This document shows, one piece after another, positions 1,868-64,000 of a stretch of 64,000 bases of DNA. A program made the position numbers and the translations under genes. Below the pieces are notes generated by a model. It searched no databases. It saw only the letters and a list, made by a program, of their open reading frames with translations, and was not told where the DNA came from. Source of the stretch: Anthoceros angustus (lineage: Eukaryota > Plantae > Anthocerotophyta); the NCBI GenBank assembly GCA_010909165.1, contig MU008180.1, forward strand, positions 929,884-993,883. The letters run 5' to 3'. The first letter of the stretch is position 1. Each line of letters begins with the position of its first letter.

Positions 1868-4800
1868 ATGCGCCATCCACATTTCTCCCCAGAACTAGAG
1901 ACTGGACTAGGAGATGTAGAAGAAGCAGAGAGTAGACCAGGAGAAGTGGAAGAACCAAAGACTAGATTAGCAGAAGCAGAAGGATCGGCGAATTTACAAT
2001 TCCTACCACAAGCCGAGATAGTAGAGGAGCAACAACAAGAAATTCAAATTTCGAAAGAAGATTCAAATGAGTAAGATAATCAAATGTATAACAATGTTCT
2101 TGTTAACAAATGATGTATAGTTGTGAGGATCATGTAAAATGTTATTTTTCCTTTTTGTGTAGAGGGAAAAAGGGAAGCTTCAAGAAGGGGGACCATCTAA
2201 GGAAAATACGAAGAGCCACTGCAGAACGTTTCAATGATGTGTTTTTGCTTGCAAATCGCAAAAACGTTGATGATGTCATCACCCCAGGAAGACATGCGCT
2301 AACAAATGCTCAAGCCAACCGTCGAGATTGGTGGAAGCCAAGATTTTCTGAGCCATTAAAAACCTGGATTTTTGGAAAGGTGCTTGATCCTCGAAGTCAC
2401 TGGGTTCAGAGTATTAATAAAGCATTGCTTATATCTTATGCCCTAGGGGCCGCTATTGATCCACTCTTTTTGTATGTTATTGCTGTGCACCATGATCTTA
2501 AATGCATATATGTGGAGGGTCTATCTCTGGTTGTGTTGTGTCTTCTGAGGAATATAAACAATGGTATGATAATTTTCTACATGCGACAACAATGTAGATT
2601 GAGTTATTTGTATGTGGATTCTATGCGTATAGGAAGAGGGGAGTTGGTTTTCGATCCAATTCGCATAGTGAAACATTATCTAAAAGGGCCATTTGCATTT
2701 GACTTTATTATGATTTTACCAGTCGCAGAGGTATTTATTTTTTATCATAGGATTTATGCAAATATTGAAAGGTGTTCATAGAAAAATAAATAAGATATTA
2801 GTATGAGTTGTTGAACTTGTTTTTCTTGGTTCACTGATCAAGTCTTCTTTTTTATGCAGTGCACTCTTTGGATAATTGTTCCTAAAATGATTCGTGGAGG
2901 AGTGAAATCTACATACATAATCAGCGTGATTTTAGTAACTTTTTGGTGTCAATATTTTATCAAAATATTTCATGTTTTTCACTTGATGCGTCGTTTACAA
3001 CGTGTAACTGGATATATTTTTGGAACACCGTGGTGGGGTTTCGCTCTCAATGCCATAGCATATTGCATAAGTGCCCATGTAAGGTCAATAACAAATTTCA
3101 CCTATTCAATAATGAGGTAGTTCAACATTTTTAAAAACTATCCTTTGTAAGATTATTAGAATTTAGATGATTCTTAATTATGCAAGAAAAAAATAAAAAT
3201 TGATATATCAATGATTTTATATCACATACGTAATGAATGTTCTGGATTACATTAATAGGTTGCTGGTTCCATATGGTATCTCCTCACGATGCAAAGAGTT
3301 TCAAGATGTATGCGCAAAATGTGTGACAATATTTCAGGATGTGATCACAAAGTAATAGGATGTCCAACTGGAACACTCTATCATATGAACCTAATACCAA
3401 ATAGCCATCAAACAACATGGAGTAATGATCCAAGTGTCTTATCTACTTGTTTTGGATCAAGTCCTTCCTATAATTATGGAATTTATCAATCTGCAGTTCC
3501 ATTAGTGACAGAACAAAATCATATTCAACGTGTCTTGTATCCATTTTTTTGGGGATTAATGACTTTCAGGTAGGCTATTGTTTATTGCCGATGAATGATA
3601 TTGTAAAAAAATTGAATAAAGATATTCAATAAATAAATATTTTTGTTTAATTTAGTTCTTGTAATCGTATATTTCTTTTTATTGATGGCAGCACATTTGG
3701 CAATAATTTGACACCAACAGATAATTTACTAGAAATCGTGTTTTGTCTTTTCATTGTAATATGCGGGCTACTTCTTTTCATGCTACTTATCGGTAACATA
3801 CAAGTAAGCACCCAAATTTAATTTACATGAGATTCAGTAGATAAATATTTAATTATAAATTAATGTTTAATTAACATATGTTTAAAAATTAATTTATAAT
3901 ATTAATATGGTTAATTAATCATATATTATTAATTATTAATATTTAATATTATCATATATAAATATTAGTATATTATTATATATTATTAATAATATCTTGA
4001 TCAAAATCTATTGTCAAGTTCAAGTAGGTATTTCTTCAAGCTATGAATACAAGAAAAGAAGCCATGCAATTGAGGGTTAGAGATCTAGGATGGTGGATGA
4101 AAAGACGTCGCATATCCTCACGTTTGAGAAAGAGAGTTTTTCACTATGAACGTGAAAAATGGGCAGCTATGAGGGGCGTTGACGAAGATGAATTATTGCA
4201 AGACCTCCCTGAAGGTTTGAGAAGAGATGTTAAACGACACTTATGCATAGACCTTATACAACAGGTATATTGTGCATGTAAAATAATAAAGCTTGCTTTA
4301 GGTCTTCCAAGAATAAAACAATATTCATGTACACCTAATGTGCTTTAAGAAAGCATTATGTGCTGAATTACTTGGACATTTTTGTGATTCACTCTCTTGG
4401 TGTGTAAAATGCTAATTCAATGTTCTTCTATCTTTTTAGGTGCCCATTTTTCAGCATCTTGATGATCTTGTGTTGGATAATATGTGTGATCGTCTCAAAC
4501 CTTTTCTTTATATAAAGAATGAATTGGTAGGAATTGGCTCCTAACTTAGATGAATTATACTCTACAAGTACAATGAATTGTTTCTACATACTCTTGCTAT
4601 CCTTTTATGTTCTTAATTTTGAGATATACATGCATATACTCCAGATTATAAGAGAAGGTGATCCCACACGAAGGATGTTATTTATATTACGAGGAGTTTT
4701 GGAATGTACACATACTCTCTACCACTCCAAGATAAGCCAAATAGTGCTCGGCTCTGGACAATTTTGTGGTGAAGAATTGTTATCTTGGTGTTTAAAACAT

Positions 4801-5205
4801 GCGGGTTCTGAAGCTAATGTTCCATTACCTCCCTCAACGGCAACTATCATTAGTCTAGAAGGAACAGAAGTTTTTGCATTCGAGGCTGTAGACTTGAAAT
4901 ACATTATTGATCATTTTAGATACATGTTTGAAAGCAAGAAATTGCGAGCAATCACTCGCTATTATTCTCCAAGTTGGAGAACTTGGGCAGCTGTAACTAT
5001 TCAATTTGCTTGGCTTAGATATTTACATAGGCAAGGAAAAATTAGAAAAAAAAAGAAAAATCTAGAAGTAAGTTCAAATGATAGCGAATCTTCTCATTCT
5101 TCTTCTTCTCGTAGGAAAAGTGCACTTGGTAAAACTCCTTCTGATCAACTCCACAAGTTTAGAGAGATAGCTCATTTTTTCCACCTAAAACCAAGTTTTT
5201 CCTAA
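1868..5205 (+). CDS. CNGC: Cyclic nucleotide-gated channel, group IV-B (CNGC2/CNGC4-like), multi-exon
   Basis: Exons encode VLDPRSHWVQ, TGYIFGTPWWGFALN, pore FFWGLMTFSTFGNNLTPTDNLLEIVF, C-linker WWMKRR...LPEGLRRDVKRHLC, CNBD GQFCGEELLSWCL...LPPST and IQ motif WRTWAAVTIQFAW. First exon/start is less certain. Confidence 0.92.
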
Positions 5206-5751: not shown

Positions 5752-8700
5752 ATGTCGCTGCATGTCTGCAGCAAGCCAAGTTCGCTGGACCAGTGTTGTA
5801 GCTGCGAGGAGCAGGAGCCGCAGGATGGCAACGACCTGCCGATCGAGGCACAGTTTGCAGGGAGGAGGAAGTTCGCGGACAAAGGGTTCCTTCCCAGTCC
5901 TGGCGGCAGCAATCGAGGTCTTGGCGTGTACAGGGGACGGGAATGGCACGCGGGCCAGTGCAATCTGGAGGGACATAATTTTGAAGTGCATGCCGACGAG
6001 GCGAGCGGCTGGCATGTCCCCCACCACATGCGAACCAGGAGCGGGGATCTTTACACAAAGATTGGGTGGGACGAGGAGGCCCACGGAATGCAAGACAGCG
6101 TTGACGAGGACAGCGATGAAGAAAGCGTGGGGAACGTGGGAGGTGACAGGTTGGAAGGGGAGGAGTGGATTACCAGTGGTGGCGGGCGATATGTCGTCAA
6201 GGGACAGGGCTCCTGGGGCGATGGCTCGGGCACTGGCTTCTCTGCGGACCCGGAAGGACTTTTTTCGACGACTTTGAAACTTCTTTCGGGGCGCTCCCGT
6301 GAGGCGGAGAGAGAGCCAGGGCATGCCGGGGTGGCAAGAGTGTTAGGCTTCAACAAGCAGCGCGGAGGTATCCTTCTTTCTCCTAGAGGCGTCACAGGCT
6401 TCAAAGACTGGTATTTGAAAAGAACCTCCCTCGCCAAGGCAACCAGCAAGTTGGAGGCTCCTCCCAAGTCCAAGTACATTCGGAAGCTGGTCTTATCCTC
6501 ATGGAAGCACAACGGAGCGGGGGCAGCCACGGTGTGTAGTCCAATTCCCTGTCTTTGTTGCTCAGCACCACGTCTGCTTGGCCTTCTAAGTTGTTCCGTC
6601 ATGAAACCACCTGGTTGCAGATATTCTCCCTTCTTTGTAAGCTGCCTCTGCTTTCTTCGCCTATTGTGACTCTCAAGGCTCTGATAACGGTGCACAAGTT
6701 GATGCAACAAGGACCAGCAGAATGCTTGGTCTCCTGCTATGCCAAGCTACCAGTTTTGAAGGAGGTGGTCAACAGCTGGGCTTCTCCGCTCAGTAAGGGA
6801 GGGTCTTATTGTCCACTCATCTGCGCCTACGCATCAATGCTGGTTGAGAAGACCAGATTTCACCACAGCTTCCCGGCTTTCGCGAATAACTACTCTGTCG
6901 ACTTCACTAGAACACCCAACAGTGAGAACTACGTACCTATCACAACAGGTGCCCTAGCATGCCTGCAGAATATTCAAGACGATATACTCCAGGCTTTGAA
7001 CGAGGGCTTTTCACTCCTGAAGGAGAAACGTACCATGCAAGGAGAGGATATAGTTGGTAACGGCGTGGTCACTGTGACTGAAGGAAATCGGAACCAAGCT
7101 TCCCATAAAGGAGGAGCTTCTGATCCTGTCGGTCTGATAGGAGCAGTTTTGATCCCCGTCTTGAGGGAGGCTGACCTGGTGTATGATATATGCTGGTATT
7201 TGATATCATCTCTTACATCAATGGCCACTGAGGATCAAGTGCCCAAGGCACCAGCTTCCCATGAGCTAGTAATAATGACAAGAAAATTTGAAGCACAGCA
7301 CAGAATGCTGCGCAGGATGTTTGACCAGGCTCGATGTGAGCCATCGATAGCCTGCAGCGTAGCTCCACCAAGCCTTCGGCCGGAACCCCCACGAGTTCTC
7401 ATTAACGAAGTGGCTATGTTAAGTATGGATGAGAGGTAAACAACTGCAGCATGTTGTGTGGTTGGAACCTCCGACATGGCGTCTACTTTGCCGTTTAACC
7501 TTTCTCTCACACAATTCTGTCTGTAGCTCAAGGGTTGAAGCTCTAGACTTCGAGGAGTCTCCAGATAACGTGGGAATTCTGCTCAAGGAAAACGAAGGAC
7601 TAGATTACACGACTCCAAAGTCCAGGCCTCAATCTGGTTCTGAGCATGACAAGACTGAAGCAAGGGACGATGAGATACTCCTCCATCCATCAGACAGCAA
7701 GCTCCTTCAGTTCCCTTCTGCAGGCTCCTCCCATCAGCGCCAAGAAGTGAACAGTGGACCCATCGTTGGAGGAGTCGGAGCAGCAGCAGCTGCTGCTATC
7801 CAGCGATTCGCTGCAGGTCTGACTTGAGTCTGTAATATGTTTCCACGTTCATGGCAAGCATCAGTCTGTCTACAGGTGGAAGTGCTTTGGTGATGACGTT
7901 CCTACATTGCTTGATGTTGCTTTAGGACAAGCCGAAGCTCGAAGGGCAGCTGCATCAGAATGTCCGCTCACACCTCCGGGTGGTTTCAAGAACATCAAGT
8001 TGGAGCCACCGCCTCCAAACTTTGGACGAGCGCATTTCACTGGGCTTGAGCGACCATCAAAGCCACAGCACACTCGGGGCAGCGGACGGGAATGGAGCAG
8101 CTTTGATGATGAGGTGTTTTATCATCAGCACTACGCTACGCCTTCCAGTCCCACACTTCACCAGTGTCCCAGGTTTTTGTCTCCAAGAGAGCAGGCTGTT
8201 TCAAGGCCTTCAGAGGCATTACACGCTGCAGATCATGGTCATGCAGCATCACCACAGAAAAGAGGCTGTGAGAGTCCAGGGTACACCAGCTTTTCAATGG
8301 AGAAAGCTAAGCAGAACAAGGACCTGAGAAGAGGGCACGAAGGAACCAGAAACAGTTGTTGCCTCTTTGATGGGCCCGCTATGGCAGCCTCTGGAATGTC
8401 CACAGAACATGCTACATTCGCCCGACTATCTAGTGTCTCTAGAAGAGATGGTCCTCCGGCGCTTGAGGCTGCAAGTGTGTCATTTCAACACCACCAGCAT
8501 GCCTCACAACAGCAGCAAACATCACCAGCAAGCTGTCGTCATTCGAAGGAGATGGGAGATCCGTATGCACATGACCTTCAGCTATTAGCTGAAAATCAAG
8601 TGGAAGCGCCATTGATCCAGTTGGAAGTGCCCCTGATTGATGTGGATACACCCCTTGTTCACTTGAGGAATCCTTCACTAGATTTTGAGCAGCCTTCCTT

Positions 8701-10626
8701 GATCGATACAGACTTGCGTCCCACCAGACTAGAAGGATCATGTCAGATGGACGTCCCTGCCGACAGGCTAGAAGTACCATGTCAGACGGAAGTGCCTCTG
8801 ATAGATTTGGATGACAGCAGGGTACCTACTGGGGACTGCAGAACTTTAGGGACAGAGGAGGCGTTTGCTAAGTTGTGCTTTGGAGTCAACTCAGCGGTAA
8901 CCGATCGCCTTCTCATGGCTACTGAAGATGTGCTGCCAACTGCACCAGCTTCATGGCAGCTAGGAGCTGCCTCCATGTCAGACTCGACAGCTTGGAAGGA
9001 CGATTTACATCCTGTCGGACTGGGTCGAAATAATGCGAAGATGGAGACTCTGCCGAAACTGGCTAGCGTAGCAGACTGGGAAATTCCTCCCTCTGAGCTC
9101 AAACTTGGTCCGAAAATTGGGCAGGTAAATCCCTTCCCAATTCCGTGCGCGGGCTGGTTGCATCAAAGGTATCAAATGTTTGCCGGAGAGTTACTTGAGC
9201 TCGTGCTGTCCGTACGTGCAGGGTGCCTTTGGTGATGTCTTGAAAGGAACATGGCAAGGCACGGATGTCGCCGTGAAGCGTCTCCAGAATGCTTTGGTGT
9301 CTGGTGTGCTGCAGGCATATGAGGACTTCAGCCGTGAGGTTGTCTTCTCTTTGAACTTGCACCTTTGTGTGAGGTTTAGCAGAAGCAGCACAGGTTCTTT
9401 AATGATGAAGAGCTCGGGAAGAAAGCAATTGACATTTGCAGCAGGTGCTCTCACACTGCTAAAGGTCTACATTTCCTATGAGTTGGGTGGACGATGACGC
9501 CCATTTTGATATGTTCTCGTTGGTTGCAGGTTGCTCTCGTCATGAGGTTGCGCCATCCAAACATCATTTTGTTCATGGGCGCATGCACAGTGCCTCCAGA
9601 AGTGTGCATAGTGATGGAATATGCAGCCAATGGGAGCCTCTATAGTGTGCTCCATAATCCGAACATTGCAATTGACATGGCCACTGTTGTGCGATGGGCA
9701 ACAGAAGCGGCTCGCGGAATGAACTACCTCCACACGCGCAGGTATTACTGAAGCTCTAATCCTTGCTCTTTCTGACGTGTCTTGAATATACAAAGATGAT
9801 AACCGTGTCATTCCTTCGTGTATGTGAAAAACACACTGCTGCGCTTTAAACAAAAGGGCTAAGATGCATCTGGTAATGAAAAAGGAATCTAGGACAATCC
9901 TTTAACATCGTAGGTATCGTCTCAGCCCTCTGCCTTTTGTTGGTGAATGTGTGGACCAGTCCTGCAGTTGTTCACCGTGACCTTAAATCTGTGAATTTGT
10001 TGGTGGATGAGGATTGGCACATTAAAGTTTCAGATTTTGGCCTTGCCATGACTAAGCAAAACGCATATGCCTACACACAGGTATTCACTTGCAGGCTTCC
10101 TATTACAAATCCTTCTTCTTGTAAGGGAATTAACAACCATGAAATAACACAAGGCGTGTTTCACCAGTATAGATGCCAGCCTCTCCTTCTGCCGCTTACT
10201 CTGTCTTGGAATTCCAGGTAGGAACATGGGGTTGGATGGCACCGGAAGTACTTGATGCTGCACCCTACGATGAGAAAGCTGATGTCTACAGTTTTGCAGT
10301 GGTGCTTTGGGAGCTTGTGACAAGGAAGGAACCCTTCAAAGGTTACCACCCAATGCAGGTAACCACAATGTGTGTAGCCTTCGTCAGTTCATGTTATGCC
10401 AGTTTTTTGGTCGATTACGTTCCACTGCAGACAATCCACCTGTAAAATTATGTGTTGAACCGTGCAGATCATGAGAGCGATTGATCGAGGAGAAAGGCCA
10501 CAGATACCTGATGGTTGTCCTCTTCCTTACAAGCACTTGATTCAGAGGTGCTGGTGCAGGGATCCTAGGCAAAGACCCACATTTGAGCAGATATTGGAGC
10601 ACCTAGCAGGCATAACTATGCTCTAA
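5752..10626 (+). CDS. ANTH (Sla2/HIP1-like) domain + Raf-like/TKL Ser/Thr kinase, putative fusion protein
   Basis: ANTH: [25 protein letters not shown] / [24 protein letters not shown] / [13 protein letters not shown] (6420-6900). Kinase: [66 protein letters not shown] (9076-10626). Start, one linker splice junction (~7620-7876) and the last exon are uncertain. Confidence 0.78.
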
Positions 10627-17366: not shown

Positions 17367-20300
17367 ATGGCGCACGGCAAGCCGCCTTTGGGGCGCACCG
17401 ACAGCGCGCGCTCTCACGTGCTGGACATGGAGATGATGTCCATTGGGAGCGGGAGCAGCAGCACCAACAACTCCGGGCAGCTGCACTGGCAGCTGCCGGA
17501 CGCCTTGGCCAGGGATCGGGCCGATCGAGATCGGGATCGGGATCGGGATCGGGATGGGGATGACGACGGGATGCTGGAGGTGATGCTGGACGTGCACAAC
17601 GACTCCGTCATTCTGCGGGGAGTGCACCCGCCGCCCGGGGTGAGTTTGAGTGGGAGCACGGGGGACAGCGGCCCGCTCAGCTTGTGGGCGTCCACCAATG
17701 CGTCTTCCAGCTTCTCCGACCCGCCGAGCAGGACGGAGAGCCTGGGGGAGGAGATGGAGCAGCACGTCACCACGCTGCTCGGGGATGGGTGGGAGAGGAA
17801 GCCGGGGACGTCGTTCAAGAGATCCGCCTCCGCCAGGATGAAGCAGATCTCGCAGGGGATAGGTAGGCTGTCCAGGAATGGGTCCTCGGCCAGGGTGAAG
17901 TCTGTCACCGCGGAGCCCAACGGGCCCAGGATGGTGCGCTCCGTCTCCAGCGCCGAGCACGCCCTCGAGGGGTTACGGTTCATCAACAAGGCCACCATCT
18001 CCGACGACCAGAAGTCCAAGTGGGAGGAGGTGGAGCAGCAATTCCACAAGCTCAAGGGGCCGGATGGGAGGCTGGCCAGGGCGGACTTCGCTAACTGTAT
18101 AGGTGTGTGTGACATGGAGCCTACCTTCGGACCCCTGCTTTTTCTTTTCTCTCCTTCCCTTGCCTTTGCTTCCCACACTCATCACCCTGCCATTTCGTGG
18201 CTGCAGGAATGAAGGACACCAAGGAGTTCGCCCACGAGCTGTTCGATGCCCTCACCAGGAGGAAGGGGCTCAAGGTCCAAACCATCAGCAAGGAGGACCT
18301 TTATGACCTCTTCTTGCAGATCACGGATCAAGGCTTTGATTCTCGAATGCAGATCTTTTTCGACTTGTGAGATACCCCAGCCTGCACCCTGCACCCCTGC
18401 ACCTTGCTCCAGGACTCCGAGTTTGCTGCTGCCTATCCTAAGCAGCTCCTCTCATGTTTTGCATTTGCGCTCTGCTGCAGGTGTGACAAGAATGGGGATG
18501 GTCGCATCACGGAGGAGGAAGTGAGGGAGGTGTTGATGCTCAGCGCTGCCGCCAACAAGCTGTCCAAGCTCAAAGAGCAGGCTGAGGAGTATGCTGCGTT
18601 GATTATGGAGGAGCTGGATCCTACAGATCAGGGGTTTATTGAGGTTGGTAGTCGTCGTGGCCATCGCAATCACAGGCCCATGCCTTTATCGCTTCCCGAA
18701 AGAGTTTTTGACATGCTATTATGCCTTTTATCCTGCTCCCTGACCCCACTCATGTGCTCTTTTTACCCGGAAATCTTGGCAGCTCTACCAACTGGAGACG
18801 TTGATGCACGGACCTGTCGGAGGATTTGGTAGGGAAGCAGTGTTGCAGTACAGCCAGACGCTTGTGCCTCAGAGGCAGAGCAACAACTTCGTGCTCTACA
18901 CTCGCCACACCCGCTTTTTCCTGCAGGAAAACAAAAGGCGGTTATTTATTGTTCTTTTATGGATTTTGGCTATGGCGGCCCTCTTCACCTGGAAGTTCCT
19001 TCAGTACCGCAGGAGGAGTTCATTTGCGACTATGGGCTACTGTGTGTGCACGGCAAAGGGTGCAGCTGAAACTCTCAAGCTCAACATGGCAATCATTCTC
19101 TTGCCAGTGTGCAGGAACACCATCACCTGGCTTCGCTCAACCTTCCTGGGGAAAGTAATCCCCTTCGATGACAATTTGAATTTCCACAAGGTGCCACCTC
19201 TTTTGAACTCTGTTGCCTCCCTGGATTTTTGATACGTCTCTGGCCGCGTCTGTGCTCACTGTGGGAAAGTTTGCCTGGCCAGCTCATTGCGTCCGGCATT
19301 GCGTTGGGAGTGCTGGTCCATGGAGGGGTTCATTTGGCGTGTGATTTTCCCAGGGTAGCTGCTGCTCCCTACGACAAGTTCGATAGGACTCTCGGAGATG
19401 ACTTCAAGCACAAGCAGCCCAACTACGTCTTCTTCCTCATGAGCGTTGAGGGCATCACTGGAATAGCCATGGTCATTCTCATGACCATAGCTTTCTCATT
19501 GGCTACTCGCTGGTCTCGACGCAATCTTGTGAAGTTGCCCTGGCCATTCCACAACATGACAGGCTTCAATGCCTTCTGGTACTCTCATCATCTCTTCGTG
19601 CTCGTCTACATCCTGCTCATCGTCCACTCGCTTTTCCTCTTCATGTCACACGGCTGGCTGCAGAAGACGGTAAGCACCGTTGTCTACTGGTTTGCCTTCT
19701 GCAGACAGCAAGGGCGTTATGTGCTTCGGGGATGGCTCAAATCATGTGCTTCTGTGATTGCAGACATGGATGTACCTTTGTGGCCCTTTGCTCCTCTACA
19801 TTGGAGAGCGAACTCTTCGGGCTTTCCGTGCGGGACGATATCATGTGAAGATTGTTCGGGTATGTATCTCCAGCAATGTCCTTGTCGTCGGTGTGTACGC
19901 TTGCTACTCCCCGTAACTCATGAATCGGCTTTCTGTTTGCTCTCCAGGCTGCAGTCTACCCTGGCAATGTGCTAGCCTTGCACATGACCAAGCCACCGGG
20001 ATTCAAGTACAAAAGTGGGATGTACATGTATCTCAAGTGCCCTCCGATCTCAAGTTTCGAGTGGCATCCATTCTCGATCACATCCGCTCCTGGTGATGAC
20101 TACCTCAGTGTGCATATCCGTACCCTAGGAGACTGGACCAAGGAGCTGAGGAGAATATTCCAAGAGGCCAACGAGTCGGCGCACAAGAATGGTCTGCAGA
20201 CTAGGAGTGGCAACTTGCGAACCATGCTTGACACACGGTACGCACCGTCAACACCTCACGCCTCCTCACTGTTGCACTTGCTTGCTTCCTTGCTTCAGCT

Positions 20301-63455: not shown

Positions 63456-64000
63456 GTAAAAAGCCGATCATCCAAAGAATTTTATTTTGGAGTGGGAATC
63501 AGTGTGGGCTTTGTAGTTGCTGTATTAGGCTGCTGGGGCCTTCATCTTCTGTGGAAGTTTTGGTTAAGAGGGAAGGGATCTGACTACATTGCCTCGTTCG
63601 ACCCTGAAACTTCAGTTTTAGGATCTACAACAAGGTTTTCCTTTGTGGAGCTCCAAACTGCTACCAACCACTTTCGGGAGAAGCTGGGTGCTGGGGGATT
63701 TGGAGCAGTGTACAAGGGAGTGCTGCAGGATCAGACAGTTGTTGCAGTGAAGCAACTTGAGAGGAAAGGTCAAGGCGAGAAGGAGTTCCGGGCAGAAGTT
63801 GCCACTATAGGGAACACTCATCACAAGAATCTGGCACGTCTTTATGGCTTCTGCTCGGAGGGAGCCCATAGGCTTTTGGTGTATGAGTACCTCTCAAAGG
63901 GCTCCCTGGACAGATATCTGCTAAGATGGAGTGATGAGGAAGAGATCGAGTTCAATCGTCCACTTCTGAATTGGGGGACCCGATTTAATGTGGCGTTGGG
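63456..64000 (+). CDS. Receptor-like kinase, SD-2-type kinase domain (TM + kinase N-lobe; runs off window end)
   Basis: TM FYFGVGISVGFVVAVLGCWGLHLLW, then RFSFVELQTATNHFREKLGAGGFGAVYKG, VAVKQLE, GQGEKEFRAEVATIG, HHKNL.RL.GFC.EG.HRLLVYEY, LNWGTRFNVAL. First exon unresolved (~62977-63110). Confidence 0.88.

What the first reader, a model, noticed from the sequence alone, without database searches (positions are those of the whole stretch)
5752..10626. Sla2/HIP1-type ANTH domain apparently fused to a Raf-like kinase: a candidate endocytic coat kinase
Seen: same-strand, closely spaced exons encode a disordered N-terminus, an ANTH domain, a long disordered linker and an intact Raf-like kinase ([21 protein letters not shown]). 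The ANTH segment [20 protein letters not shown]...[13 protein letters not shown]...EKTRFH resembles Sla2/HIP1 (K..S..E..PK.KH.R) more than typical plant AP180/PICALM proteins. Known: ANTH domains bind PI(4,5)P2 at clathrin-coated pits; the animal coat kinases AAK1/GAK are NAK-family kinases; plant Raf-like MAPKKKs usually carry PAS, EDR1, ACT, PB1 or ankyrin N-termini. Inference: this may be a seed-free-plant protein that couples membrane/coat binding to Raf-type signalling. I cannot confirm from sequence alone whether the architecture has been described before.
Basis: partly seen in the sequence, partly recalled or inferred. Interest (0 to 1): 0.82.

Follow-up and report, generated by a model that had tools for sequence, protein, structure and literature searches.

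The report
Sla2-type ANTH domain fused to kinase
This plant gene really does encode one long protein that joins a membrane-lipid-binding module of the yeast Sla2 / human HIP1R endocytosis type to a Raf-like signalling kinase; the same fusion occurs in liverworts (Marchantia MpMAPKKK22) and early green algae, and I found no paper that describes it.

Summary
Observation confirmed. Nine + strand exons (5752-10626) splice through canonical GT..AG introns into one 1277-aa ORF. It has a disordered N-terminus, an ANTH domain (Pfam PF07651), a linker of about 480 aa and a complete TKL/Raf-like kinase.

The fusion is not an annotation accident:
- Marchantia MpMAPKKK22 aligns in order to all nine exons.
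- Riccia, Calypogeia, Mesostigma and Prasinoderma proteins share the layout.
- A 2971-nt contig from another organism carries both domains in one uninterrupted ORF.
- A related genomic contig has the same exon borders, and pN is below pS in every exon.

The ANTH is of the Sla2/HIP1R type. A family profile hits Sla2 at 3.9e-36 and HIP1R at 4.2e-33 over the whole domain, against 4e-6 for CALM/AP180 over the first 80 residues. [quoted passage not shown] The PI(4,5)P2 motif, a WSSFDDE motif and clathrin-box-like motifs are conserved.

A role as a coat or membrane kinase is inferred, not shown. No RNA evidence for this genome could be obtained. I found no paper on this architecture, and a 2012 survey calls Sla2-type ANTH unikont-specific. 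The scan's other notes on this feature cover this same stretch, not other DNA.

The parts
5752..6531 (+). Exon 1 (aa 1-260): start codon, conserved but unassigned N-terminal region, and the first ANTH helices
   Evidence: First in-frame ATG. The related contig L002 begins with the same Met-Ser-Leu and aligns from residue 1. Nucleotide conservation with L002 stops at 6533. Pfam ANTH profile 5-38.
6436..6477 (+). PI(4,5)P2-binding signature K-x9-K-x-K-Y (KATSK..PPKSKY)
   Evidence: One match where 0.01 is expected by shuffling. Conserved in the liverwort orthologues and in P0029, P0046 and P0047.
6621..7435 (+). Exon 2 (aa 261-531): the body of the Sla2/HIP1R-type ANTH domain, with a loop inserted relative to Sla2
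   Evidence: Pfam ANTH E 8.9e-16. The only meaningful PDB sequence hits are Sla2 and HIP1R ANTH. 44% identical to MpMAPKKK22 residues 278-543.
7527..7816 (+). Exon 3 (aa 532-628): disordered linker ending in a conserved Gly/Ala-rich island ([18 protein letters not shown])
   Evidence: Aligns to MpMAPKKK22 residues 585-644. The island is in the liverwort consensus and in L002. The blastn block 7756-7818 ends at the donor.
7926..9124 (+). Exon 4 (aa 629-1028): long linker and the start of the kinase domain
   Evidence: Acceptor AG at 7924-7925. The L002 conserved block starts at 7924, and in L002 the intron sits at the same place and holds stop codons. dN/dS is about 0.29.
8093..8119 (+). WSSFDDEVF: a WxxF-acidic motif, candidate AP-2 appendage ligand
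   Evidence: WSSF is conserved in the window, in L002 and in all five liverwort proteins. W..F motifs also occur in the Prasinoderma linker. Binding is inferred.
8612..8812 (+). Array of clathrin-box-like motifs (LIQLE, LIDVD, LIDTD, LIDLD)
   Evidence: Three strict L-phi-x-phi-[DE] matches where 0.88 is expected (p about 0.06). The array is a conserved island in L002 (blastn block 8619-8715). One box (LIELE) is conserved in liverworts.
9222..9338 (+). Exon 5: Gly-rich loop and VAVK lysine (AAG at 9276-9278)
9530..9741 (+). Exon 6: alpha-C helix to hinge of the kinase
   Evidence: Pfam PK_Tyr_Ser-Thr 5.5e-16. Best PDB hit is Arabidopsis CTR1, 8.8e-17. 86% identical to MpMAPKKK22.
9960..10080 (+). 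Exon 7: catalytic loop HRDLK (9973-9987) and DFG (10033-10041)
   Evidence: 88% identical to MpMAPKKK22.
10218..10358 (+). Exon 8: activation segment with GTWGWMAPE (10221-10247)
10468..10626 (+). Exon 9: C-lobe end and stop codon (10624-10626)

Best explanation
The locus is one gene for a 1277-aa cytosolic protein, the orthologue of Marchantia polymorpha MpMAPKKK22. An N-terminal Sla2/HIP1R-type ANTH domain with an intact PI(4,5)P2-binding signature is tied to a catalytically complete TKL/Raf-like kinase. The tie is a disordered linker of about 480 aa that carries conserved short motifs: a WxxF-acidic motif and clathrin-box-like motifs. Shown here: the architecture, its conservation from prasinodermophyte and Mesostigma algae to liverworts and this plant, and purifying selection on every part. 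Inferred: the ANTH docks the protein on PI(4,5)P2-rich plasma membrane, the linker motifs hold it at clathrin/AP-2 coats, and the kinase then phosphorylates coat components, cargo or downstream signalling proteins there. On this reading it works like the animal coat kinases AAK1/GAK, with a different kinase and a different targeting module. The family seems to keep the membrane end of an ancestral Sla2-like protein, with a kinase where Sla2 has its actin-binding end.
For: One ORF with 8 canonical introns. Pfam ANTH and kinase hits fall in consecutive exons. MpMAPKKK22 aligns in order to all nine exons, and the HSP ends match the exon borders. ANTH plus kinase lie on one protein in Marchantia (two species), Riccia (two species), Calypogeia, Mesostigma and Prasinoderma. 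Contig L001 carries both domains in one uninterrupted 961-aa ORF. The related genomic contig L002 has the same start codon, the same exon order and an intron with stops at the 7816/7926 junction. Nucleotide conservation blocks end within 1-3 nt of most of my exon borders, and 10-17 nt outside two acceptors. pN is below pS in all exons, with dN/dS 0.01-0.08 in the kinase exons where dS could be computed, 0.03 in the ANTH head and about 0.3 in the linker. The family ANTH profile hits Sla2 at 3.9e-36 and HIP1R at 4.2e-33 over the whole domain, against CALM/AP180 at about 4e-6 over the first 80 residues. The AlphaFold model of the orthologue's ANTH (pTM 0.80) matches Sla2 and HIP1R ANTH first. The K-x9-K-x-K-Y signature and the WSSF and clathrin-box motifs are conserved. 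The kinase has every catalytic motif, and its best PDB hits are CTR1, MLKs and ZAK.
Against: A single transcript is therefore inferred from ORF integrity and orthology. No lipid, clathrin or AP-2 binding and no kinase substrate has been tested for any family member, as far as I could find. The clathrin-box count in the window is only marginally above chance (p about 0.06). Only one box is conserved in most liverworts, and none is found in Calypogeia or Prasinoderma. ANTH domains also bind SNAREs and ubiquitin, so coat localisation does not follow from the domain alone. Fold similarity barely separates the Sla2-type from the CALM-type (TM 0.74-0.83 against 0.61-0.77).
Confidence: 0.65

Rival explanations
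1. The fusion protein is real but is not a coat component. The ANTH serves only as a phosphoinositide-dependent membrane anchor, or as a ubiquitin/SNARE reader, that places a MAPKKK-type kinase at the plasma membrane, cell plate or endosomes for stress or developmental signalling. The linker motifs would be incidental.
For: The kinase is of the plant Raf-like/TKL kind, whose characterised members act in signalling cascades (best PDB hit CTR1). The clathrin-box enrichment is weak and not conserved across the whole family. Published work shows that ANTH domains of CALM, HIP1R and Sla2 bind ubiquitin (PMC8648300, found).
Against: The ANTH subtype is the one used by the endocytic mid-coat proteins Sla2/HIP1R. 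WSSF-acidic and LIxL[DE] motifs are conserved islands in an otherwise fast-evolving linker. Distant relatives combine the same ANTH and kinase with SH3 or ArfGAP modules typical of membrane traffic.
Confidence: 0.27
2. Two adjacent genes: an ANTH-only adaptor ending near 7827, and a separate kinase gene starting downstream, joined only by my splice model.
For: If intron 3 is retained, the frame meets a stop at 7825-7827, so a short ANTH-only isoform is possible. There are no RNA data from this genome.
Against: Sequence on both sides of the junction is conserved inside single proteins of liverworts. L002 has the same junction. Exon 4 has no in-frame ATG for about 130 codons and is under purifying selection. 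L001 encodes both domains in one uninterrupted ORF.
Confidence: 0.05
3. The locus is a silent or decaying copy in this genome.
For: None, beyond the lack of expression data.
Against: The ORF is intact at 1277 aa, all splice sites are canonical and all catalytic residues are present. Constraint against the L002 relative is strong.
Confidence: 0.03

Closest known systems
Marchantia polymorpha MpMAPKKK22 (BBN19151.1, 1189 aa) and its liverwort orthologues (M. paleacea, Riccia fluitans, R. sorocarpa, Calypogeia fissa)
   Same: Same order of parts: N-terminal region, Sla2-type ANTH, long linker with WSSFDDE and a clathrin-box-like motif, then a C-terminal TKL kinase. It aligns in order to all nine exons, with the kinase exons up to 86-88% and the ANTH 44% identical. 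In the ANTH tree the window groups with the liverworts at 100/99 support.
   Different: The window protein is longer in the linker and has more clathrin-box-like motifs (3 strict, against 0-1). It lies outside the liverwort clade. No function is published for MpMAPKKK22 in the library searched.
Sla2 (yeast) / HIP1 and HIP1R (animals)
   Same: The ANTH domain is of this subtype over its whole length, including the K..PK.K[HY] lipid-binding head and the FH..P.F.(G)N segment.
   Different: No I/LWEQ (THATCH) actin-binding domain, and no detected central coiled coil. The C-terminus is a protein kinase instead. In the ANTH tree no I/LWEQ protein falls inside the green ANTH-kinase clade, which has 100/98 support.
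AAK1 / GAK (NAK-family coat kinases of animals)
   Same: The proposed logic is the same: a kinase held at clathrin/AP-2 coats by linear motifs in a disordered region.
   Different: The kinase here is TKL/Raf-like, not NAK. AAK1 and GAK have no ANTH domain. The resemblance is functional and inferred only.
Plant Raf-like MAPKKKs (CTR1, EDR1, PAS-, PB1-, ACT- and ankyrin-bearing groups)
   Same: TKL kinase domain with the GTxx(W/Y)MAPE signature. CTR1 is the best solved-structure match to exon 6.
   Different: The N-terminal module is ANTH. In the searches run, the kinase domain is at most about 47% identical to any kinase outside the family, against 55-98% for the green-lineage members compared with MpMAPKKK22.
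Plant AP180/PICALM/ECA ANTH proteins
   Same: ANTH fold, PI(4,5)P2 signature and clathrin-binding motifs in a disordered tail.
   Different: A different ANTH subfamily: the profile E-value is 4e-6 over the first 80 residues only, against about 1e-36 for Sla2. These proteins have no kinase.

Membership tests
ANTH domain (Pfam PF07651) | Score above the Pfam gathering threshold | tested here: met
   Exon 2 scores 58.1 bits against a cutoff of 21.5, E 8.9e-16, profile 41-171. The exon 1 tail supplies profile 5-38. The orthologue P0081 scores 84.9 bits.
ANTH domain (Pfam PF07651) | PI(4,5)P2-binding signature K-x9-K-x-(K/R)-(H/Y) on the first helices | tested here: met
   [14 protein letters not shown] at aa 229-242. 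One match where 0.01 is expected, and it is conserved in orthologues. Lipid binding itself was not tested.
ANTH domain (Pfam PF07651) | All-helical ANTH solenoid fold | tested here: met
   Tested on the Marchantia orthologue, not on the window protein. The AF2 model has pTM 0.80, and its top PDB matches are all ANTH domains: Sla2, HIP1R, then CALM and AP180.
Sla2/HIP1/HIP1R family | ANTH of the Sla2/HIP1R subtype | tested here: met
   The family profile hits Sla2 at 3.9e-36 and HIP1R at 4.2e-33 over the full domain. CALM/AP180 score about 4e-6 over the N-terminal 80 residues only. Of 65 library hits to exon 2, 20 carry I/LWEQ.
Sla2/HIP1/HIP1R family | C-terminal I/LWEQ (THATCH) actin-binding domain | tested here: not met
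   No PF01608 hit in any exon translation, nor in any of the green-lineage orthologues scanned. The C-terminus is a kinase.
Sla2/HIP1/HIP1R family | Central dimeric coiled coil that binds clathrin light chain | not tested
   No coiled-coil predictor was run. Pfam finds nothing in exons 3-4.
Plant Raf-like MAPKKK / TKL kinases | PK_Tyr_Ser-Thr-type kinase domain with all catalytic motifs (GxGxxG, VAVK, alpha-C Glu, HRDLKxxN, DFG, APE) | tested here: met
   The best solved relatives are CTR1, MLK1, DLK, ZAK and TAK1.
Plant Raf-like MAPKKK / TKL kinases | Raf-type signature GTxx(W/Y)MAPE (MAPK Group 2002 classification, from my own knowledge) | tested here: met
   GTWGWMAPE at 10221-10247.
Plant Raf-like MAPKKK / TKL kinases | Placement inside one of the named B or C Raf subgroups | tested here: inconclusive
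   The nearest non-family plant kinases found carry ACT (42%), PAS (46%) or PB1 (36-39%) domains, or are Brassica proteins of about CTR1's length (39%). None is close, and no kinase tree was built.
Plant Raf-like MAPKKK / TKL kinases | Phosphorylates a MAPKK | not testable with these tools
   Needs biochemistry.
NAK-family coat kinases (AAK1/GAK) | NAK-type kinase domain | tested here: not met
   The listed PDB hits to exon 6 are TKL-group kinases, and those to exon 8 are TKL kinases first, then STE20-type kinases. No AAK1, GAK or BIKE appears among the 60 listed for either exon.
MpMAPKKK22 orthogroup (green-lineage ANTH-kinase) | Full-length alignment in order, and monophyly of the ANTH with family members | tested here: met
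   tblastn of P0081 covers all nine exons in order. The clade with liverworts has 100/99 support, and the wider green ANTH-kinase clade has 100/98.

The most novel reading that the evidence does not exclude
The green-lineage ANTH-kinase is the direct descendant of a Sla2/HIP1R-like mid-coat protein of the last eukaryotic common ancestor. In it the actin-binding THATCH end was exchanged for a kinase. It still co-assembles with epsin ENTH domains on PI(4,5)P2 at endocytic sites, and it turns coat assembly or membrane state into a phosphorylation signal. Mosses and vascular plants would then have lost this module. That would overturn the published view that Sla2-type ANTH is confined to opisthokonts and amoebozoans.
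Probability: 0.15. Interest if true: 0.85.

Novelty: new variant of a known kind. Interest (0 to 1): 0.62.

Why it matters
Plants are usually said to lack Sla2/HIP1R. One survey (PMC3473312) assigns that ANTH subfamily to opisthokonts and amoebozoans only. Here a Sla2-type ANTH is found across the green lineage, always joined to a kinase.

This matters in three ways:
- It pushes the origin of the subtype deeper into eukaryote history.
- It adds a Raf-like kinase class whose targeting module is a phosphoinositide/coat-binding domain. The known targeting modules are PAS, EDR1, PB1, ACT and ankyrin.
- It offers a directly testable link between endocytic membranes and kinase signalling, because Marchantia polymorpha has the orthologue (MpMAPKKK22) and is genetically tractable.

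The apparent absence from mosses and vascular plants, if confirmed, would be another case of an ancestral trafficking or signalling component kept only in some bryophytes and algae.

Tried and rejected
- **Word-index search, Riccia ANTH region.** It found only three liverwort proteins.
- **Word-index search, family alignment.** It was swamped by generic kinases and added only Calypogeia.
- **Word-index search, kinase domain.** This search added Mesostigma and an unnamed ENA protein.
- **Fold search.** It confirms the ANTH fold but separates Sla2-type from CALM-type only weakly. The sequence-profile comparison is the discriminating test.
- **Outgroup rooting of the ANTH tree.** Not possible, because I had no AP180/PICALM sequences by reference. 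The tree is unrooted or midpoint-rooted.
- **Literature.** Nine searches found no description. They combined ANTH, Raf-like, MAPKKK, MpMAPKKK22, Sla2 and plant terms. Subscription journals are not covered.
- **L001 as transcript evidence.** I considered whether L001 proves a transcript. Its library type is unknown and it ends in Illumina adapter. I therefore use it only as proof of one uninterrupted ORF spanning both domains.
- **Handling of the joined model.** The joined 1277-aa model was never typed or sent to a database tool. All database searches used single exons by reference, or proteins the tools returned. The joined translation existed only as a scratch file inside scripts. There it served for the ORF check, local tblastn against the two fetched loci, motif counts and one tree row.
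Full report
**Observation.**
The + strand between 5752 and 10626 holds a series of open frames. Their translations score, in order, as ANTH and then as a protein kinase.
- ANTH (PF07651): the exon 1 tail matches profile 5-38. Exon 2 matches profile 41-171 at E 8.9e-16, 58.1 bits against a cutoff of 21.5.
- Kinase (PF07714/PF00069): exons 5-9 cover profile positions 9-258.

I placed splice sites by frame and consensus. The nine exons are 5752-6531, 6621-7435, 7527-7816, 7926-9124, 9222-9338, 9530-9741, 9960-10080, 10218-10358 and 10468-10626. Joined, they give 3834 nt, one ORF of 1277 codons plus the stop, and eight GT..AG introns of 89-218 nt.

The join reads ..FAAG|QAEARR.. across it.

**Is it one gene?**
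Five independent lines say yes.
1. An exhaustive HMMER search with exon 2 found only 65 relatives among 1.84 billion representative proteins. Ten of them also carry a kinase domain.
2. Named single proteins with ANTH followed by a C-terminal kinase come from several species:
   - Marchantia polymorpha, named MpMAPKKK22 (BBN19151.1, 1189 aa), and M. paleacea;
   - Riccia fluitans and R. sorocarpa;
   - Calypogeia fissa;
   - the streptophyte alga Mesostigma viride (1445 aa);
   - the prasinodermophyte Prasinoderma coloniale (1132 aa).
3. MpMAPKKK22 aligns by tblastn to every exon, in order, and the HSP ends coincide with my exon borders. Exon 3, too diverged for the default threshold, aligns to residues 585-644, in the right place. 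The liverwort consensus contains the same sequence on both sides of the 7816/7926 junction.
4. The 2971-nt contig L001, from an unidentified GC-rich organism, encodes ANTH and kinase in one uninterrupted 961-aa ORF. This cannot be an exon-joining artefact.
5. L002 is a 7014-nt genomic contig from a closer relative, 37-95% identical at the protein level by segment.
   - It has the same Met-Ser-Leu start and the same exon order.
   - Its intron at exactly the ..AG|QAEAR.. junction contains stop codons.
   - blastn conservation blocks between the two genomes end within 1-3 nt of most of my exon borders, and 10-17 nt outside two acceptors.
   - pN is well below pS in every exon. dN/dS is about 0.01-0.08 in the kinase exons where dS could be computed, 0.03 in the ANTH head, 0.15 in the N-terminus and 0.3-0.5 in the linker. 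Synonymous sites are near saturation, so the ratios are rough.

**What kind of ANTH?**
- Exon 2 alone hits only Sla2 and HIP1R ANTH structures in the PDB at a meaningful level (E 4e-6 to 5e-3) and no CALM or AP180.
- A profile of the family's ANTH region (alignment A3) hits Sla2 at 3.9e-36 and HIP1R at 4.2e-33 over the entire domain. CALM, PICALM and AP180 reach only about 4e-6, over the first 80 residues.
- Twenty of the 65 library relatives are canonical Sla2/HIP1R proteins with I/LWEQ.
- An AlphaFold model of the Marchantia ANTH (pTM 0.80, with two low-confidence loops) matches Sla2 and HIP1R ANTH first and CALM/AP180 next. The TM-scores overlap.
- In a maximum-likelihood tree of 49 ANTH domains, the window groups with the liverworts (100/99 support).
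- A wider clade holds the Mesostigma, Prasinoderma and unnamed algal-type sequences. It is separated from all I/LWEQ proteins (100/98). The tree is unrooted.
- The lipid-binding signature K-x9-K-x-K-Y is present (aa 229-242) and conserved.
- The I/LWEQ domain that defines Sla2/HIP1R is absent. The protein therefore shares the ANTH subtype but is not a member of that family.

**The kinase.**
All catalytic motifs are intact: the Gly loop, [15 protein letters not shown] and GTWGWMAPE, followed by the conserved Asp and Arg of the C-lobe. The best solved relatives are Arabidopsis CTR1 (8.8e-17 for exon 6), then MLK, DLK, ZAK and TAK1. It is therefore a TKL/Raf-like kinase, not a NAK-family one.

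Compared with MpMAPKKK22, the kinase domain of the other green-lineage members is 55-98% identical. In the searches run, no kinase outside the family exceeded about 47%. The nearest plant ones carry PAS, ACT or PB1 domains, or are Brassica proteins of about CTR1's length. I did not build a kinase tree, so its place among the Raf subgroups stays open.

**The linker.**
Pfam finds nothing in exons 3-4. Even so, several islands are conserved against a fast-evolving background:
- a Gly/Ala-rich segment at the exon 3/4 junction;
- IKLEPPP;
- the WSSFDDE(V/I)F motif, conserved in the window, in L002 and in all five liverworts;
- an array of clathrin-box-like motifs at 8612-8812, which is a nucleotide-level conserved block in L002. 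One box (LIELE) is conserved in four of the five liverworts.

Statistically the box count in the window is only marginal: 3 where 0.88 is expected, p about 0.06. Earlier scan notes s1-680409 and s1-680521 pointed to these motifs. The first WxxF of the latter note (at about 7877) lies in intron 3 under the supported model.

**Mechanism (inferred).**
1. The ANTH binds PI(4,5)P2 at the plasma membrane.
2. The linker motifs engage the clathrin terminal domain and the AP-2 appendage.
3. The kinase acts on nearby coat, cargo or signalling proteins.

Distant, unnamed relatives combine the same ANTH and kinase with SH3 or ArfGAP domains, or with a second kinase. This fits a membrane-traffic setting. 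The main rival is a plain membrane-anchored signalling kinase with no coat role.

**Distribution and novelty.**
Named members come from liverworts, Mesostigma and Prasinoderma, plus this genome. Other agents' notes take this genome for a hornwort. I did not test that, beyond finding that its ANTH lies outside the liverworts.

No moss or vascular-plant member appeared among the top hits of the kinase-domain search, where family members score at 61-98% identity. That search is word-limited and length-limited, so loss in those lineages is a hypothesis only.

Nine literature searches found no paper on an ANTH-kinase or on MpMAPKKK22. De Craene et al. 2012 (PMC3473312) state that the Sla2/HIP1 ANTH subfamily is specific to opisthokonts and amoebozoans. 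The sequences are in public databases with automatic domain labels, so the architecture is catalogued but, as far as I can see, not described.

**Surroundings.**
- Upstream on the same strand lies a CNGC-like gene (cNMP-binding domain plus IQ motif) ending at 5205, in AT-rich DNA.
- Downstream, the first recognisable gene found is an RBOH-type NADPH oxidase on the + strand, from about 17.4 kb.
- Another TKL kinase N-lobe lies at the window's end, 63564-63908.

Database searches used single exons by reference, or proteins returned by the tools. The joined model was not typed or submitted to any search tool. It was used only inside scripts.

Noticed in passing
window 4534-5205 (+), probably extending upstream to about 1500: The last exon of a cyclic-nucleotide-gated-channel-like gene (cNMP-binding domain followed by an IQ-type motif) lies in markedly AT-rich DNA (GC 0.22-0.39). 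This borders directly on the GC-rich (0.50-0.59) ANTH-kinase gene.
   Followed up: partly
window 63564-63908 (+): A second TKL-type kinase N-lobe (PK_Tyr_Ser-Thr 6.2e-16), 31-37% identical to the kinase N-lobes of MpMAPKKK22, the Riccia sorocarpa protein and the Prasinoderma protein. It is cut by the window end.
   Followed up: partly
window 17367-18212 (+): An ORF with a respiratory-burst NADPH oxidase (RBOH) N-terminal domain (PF08414, 9.8e-16). It is the first recognisable gene found downstream.
   Followed up: no
window 6085-6215 (aa about 112-155 of the model): A conserved N-terminal island ([21 protein letters not shown]) is shared with L002. Its core, YVVKGHGSWGD, is in the liverwort consensus. 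It matches no Pfam family and its function is unknown.
   Followed up: no
window 7756-7816 and 7926-7960: A Gly/Ala-rich hydrophobic island ([18 protein letters not shown], then QAEARRAAA) straddles intron 3. It is conserved from this plant to liverworts. It could be an amphipathic or membrane-inserting helix, or a dimerisation element.
   Followed up: no
proteins P0029, P0065, P0047, P0233, P0042, P0050 (unnamed Logan/JGI/ENA/NCBI contigs): Other eukaryotes combine a Sla2-type ANTH with kinases in different layouts. Seen by Pfam: ANTH-SH3-kinase (P0029), ANTH-ArfGAP-kinase (P0065) and kinase-ANTH-kinase (P0047, P0233). Seen by BLAST only: a reversed kinase-then-ANTH order (P0042, P0050). The source organisms are not identified.
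   Followed up: partly
L001 2944-2971: The Logan contig ends in Illumina adapter sequence (AGATCGGAAGAGC...). Its last ~28 bases are therefore not biological.
   Followed up: yes
It is probably not translated.
   Followed up: yes
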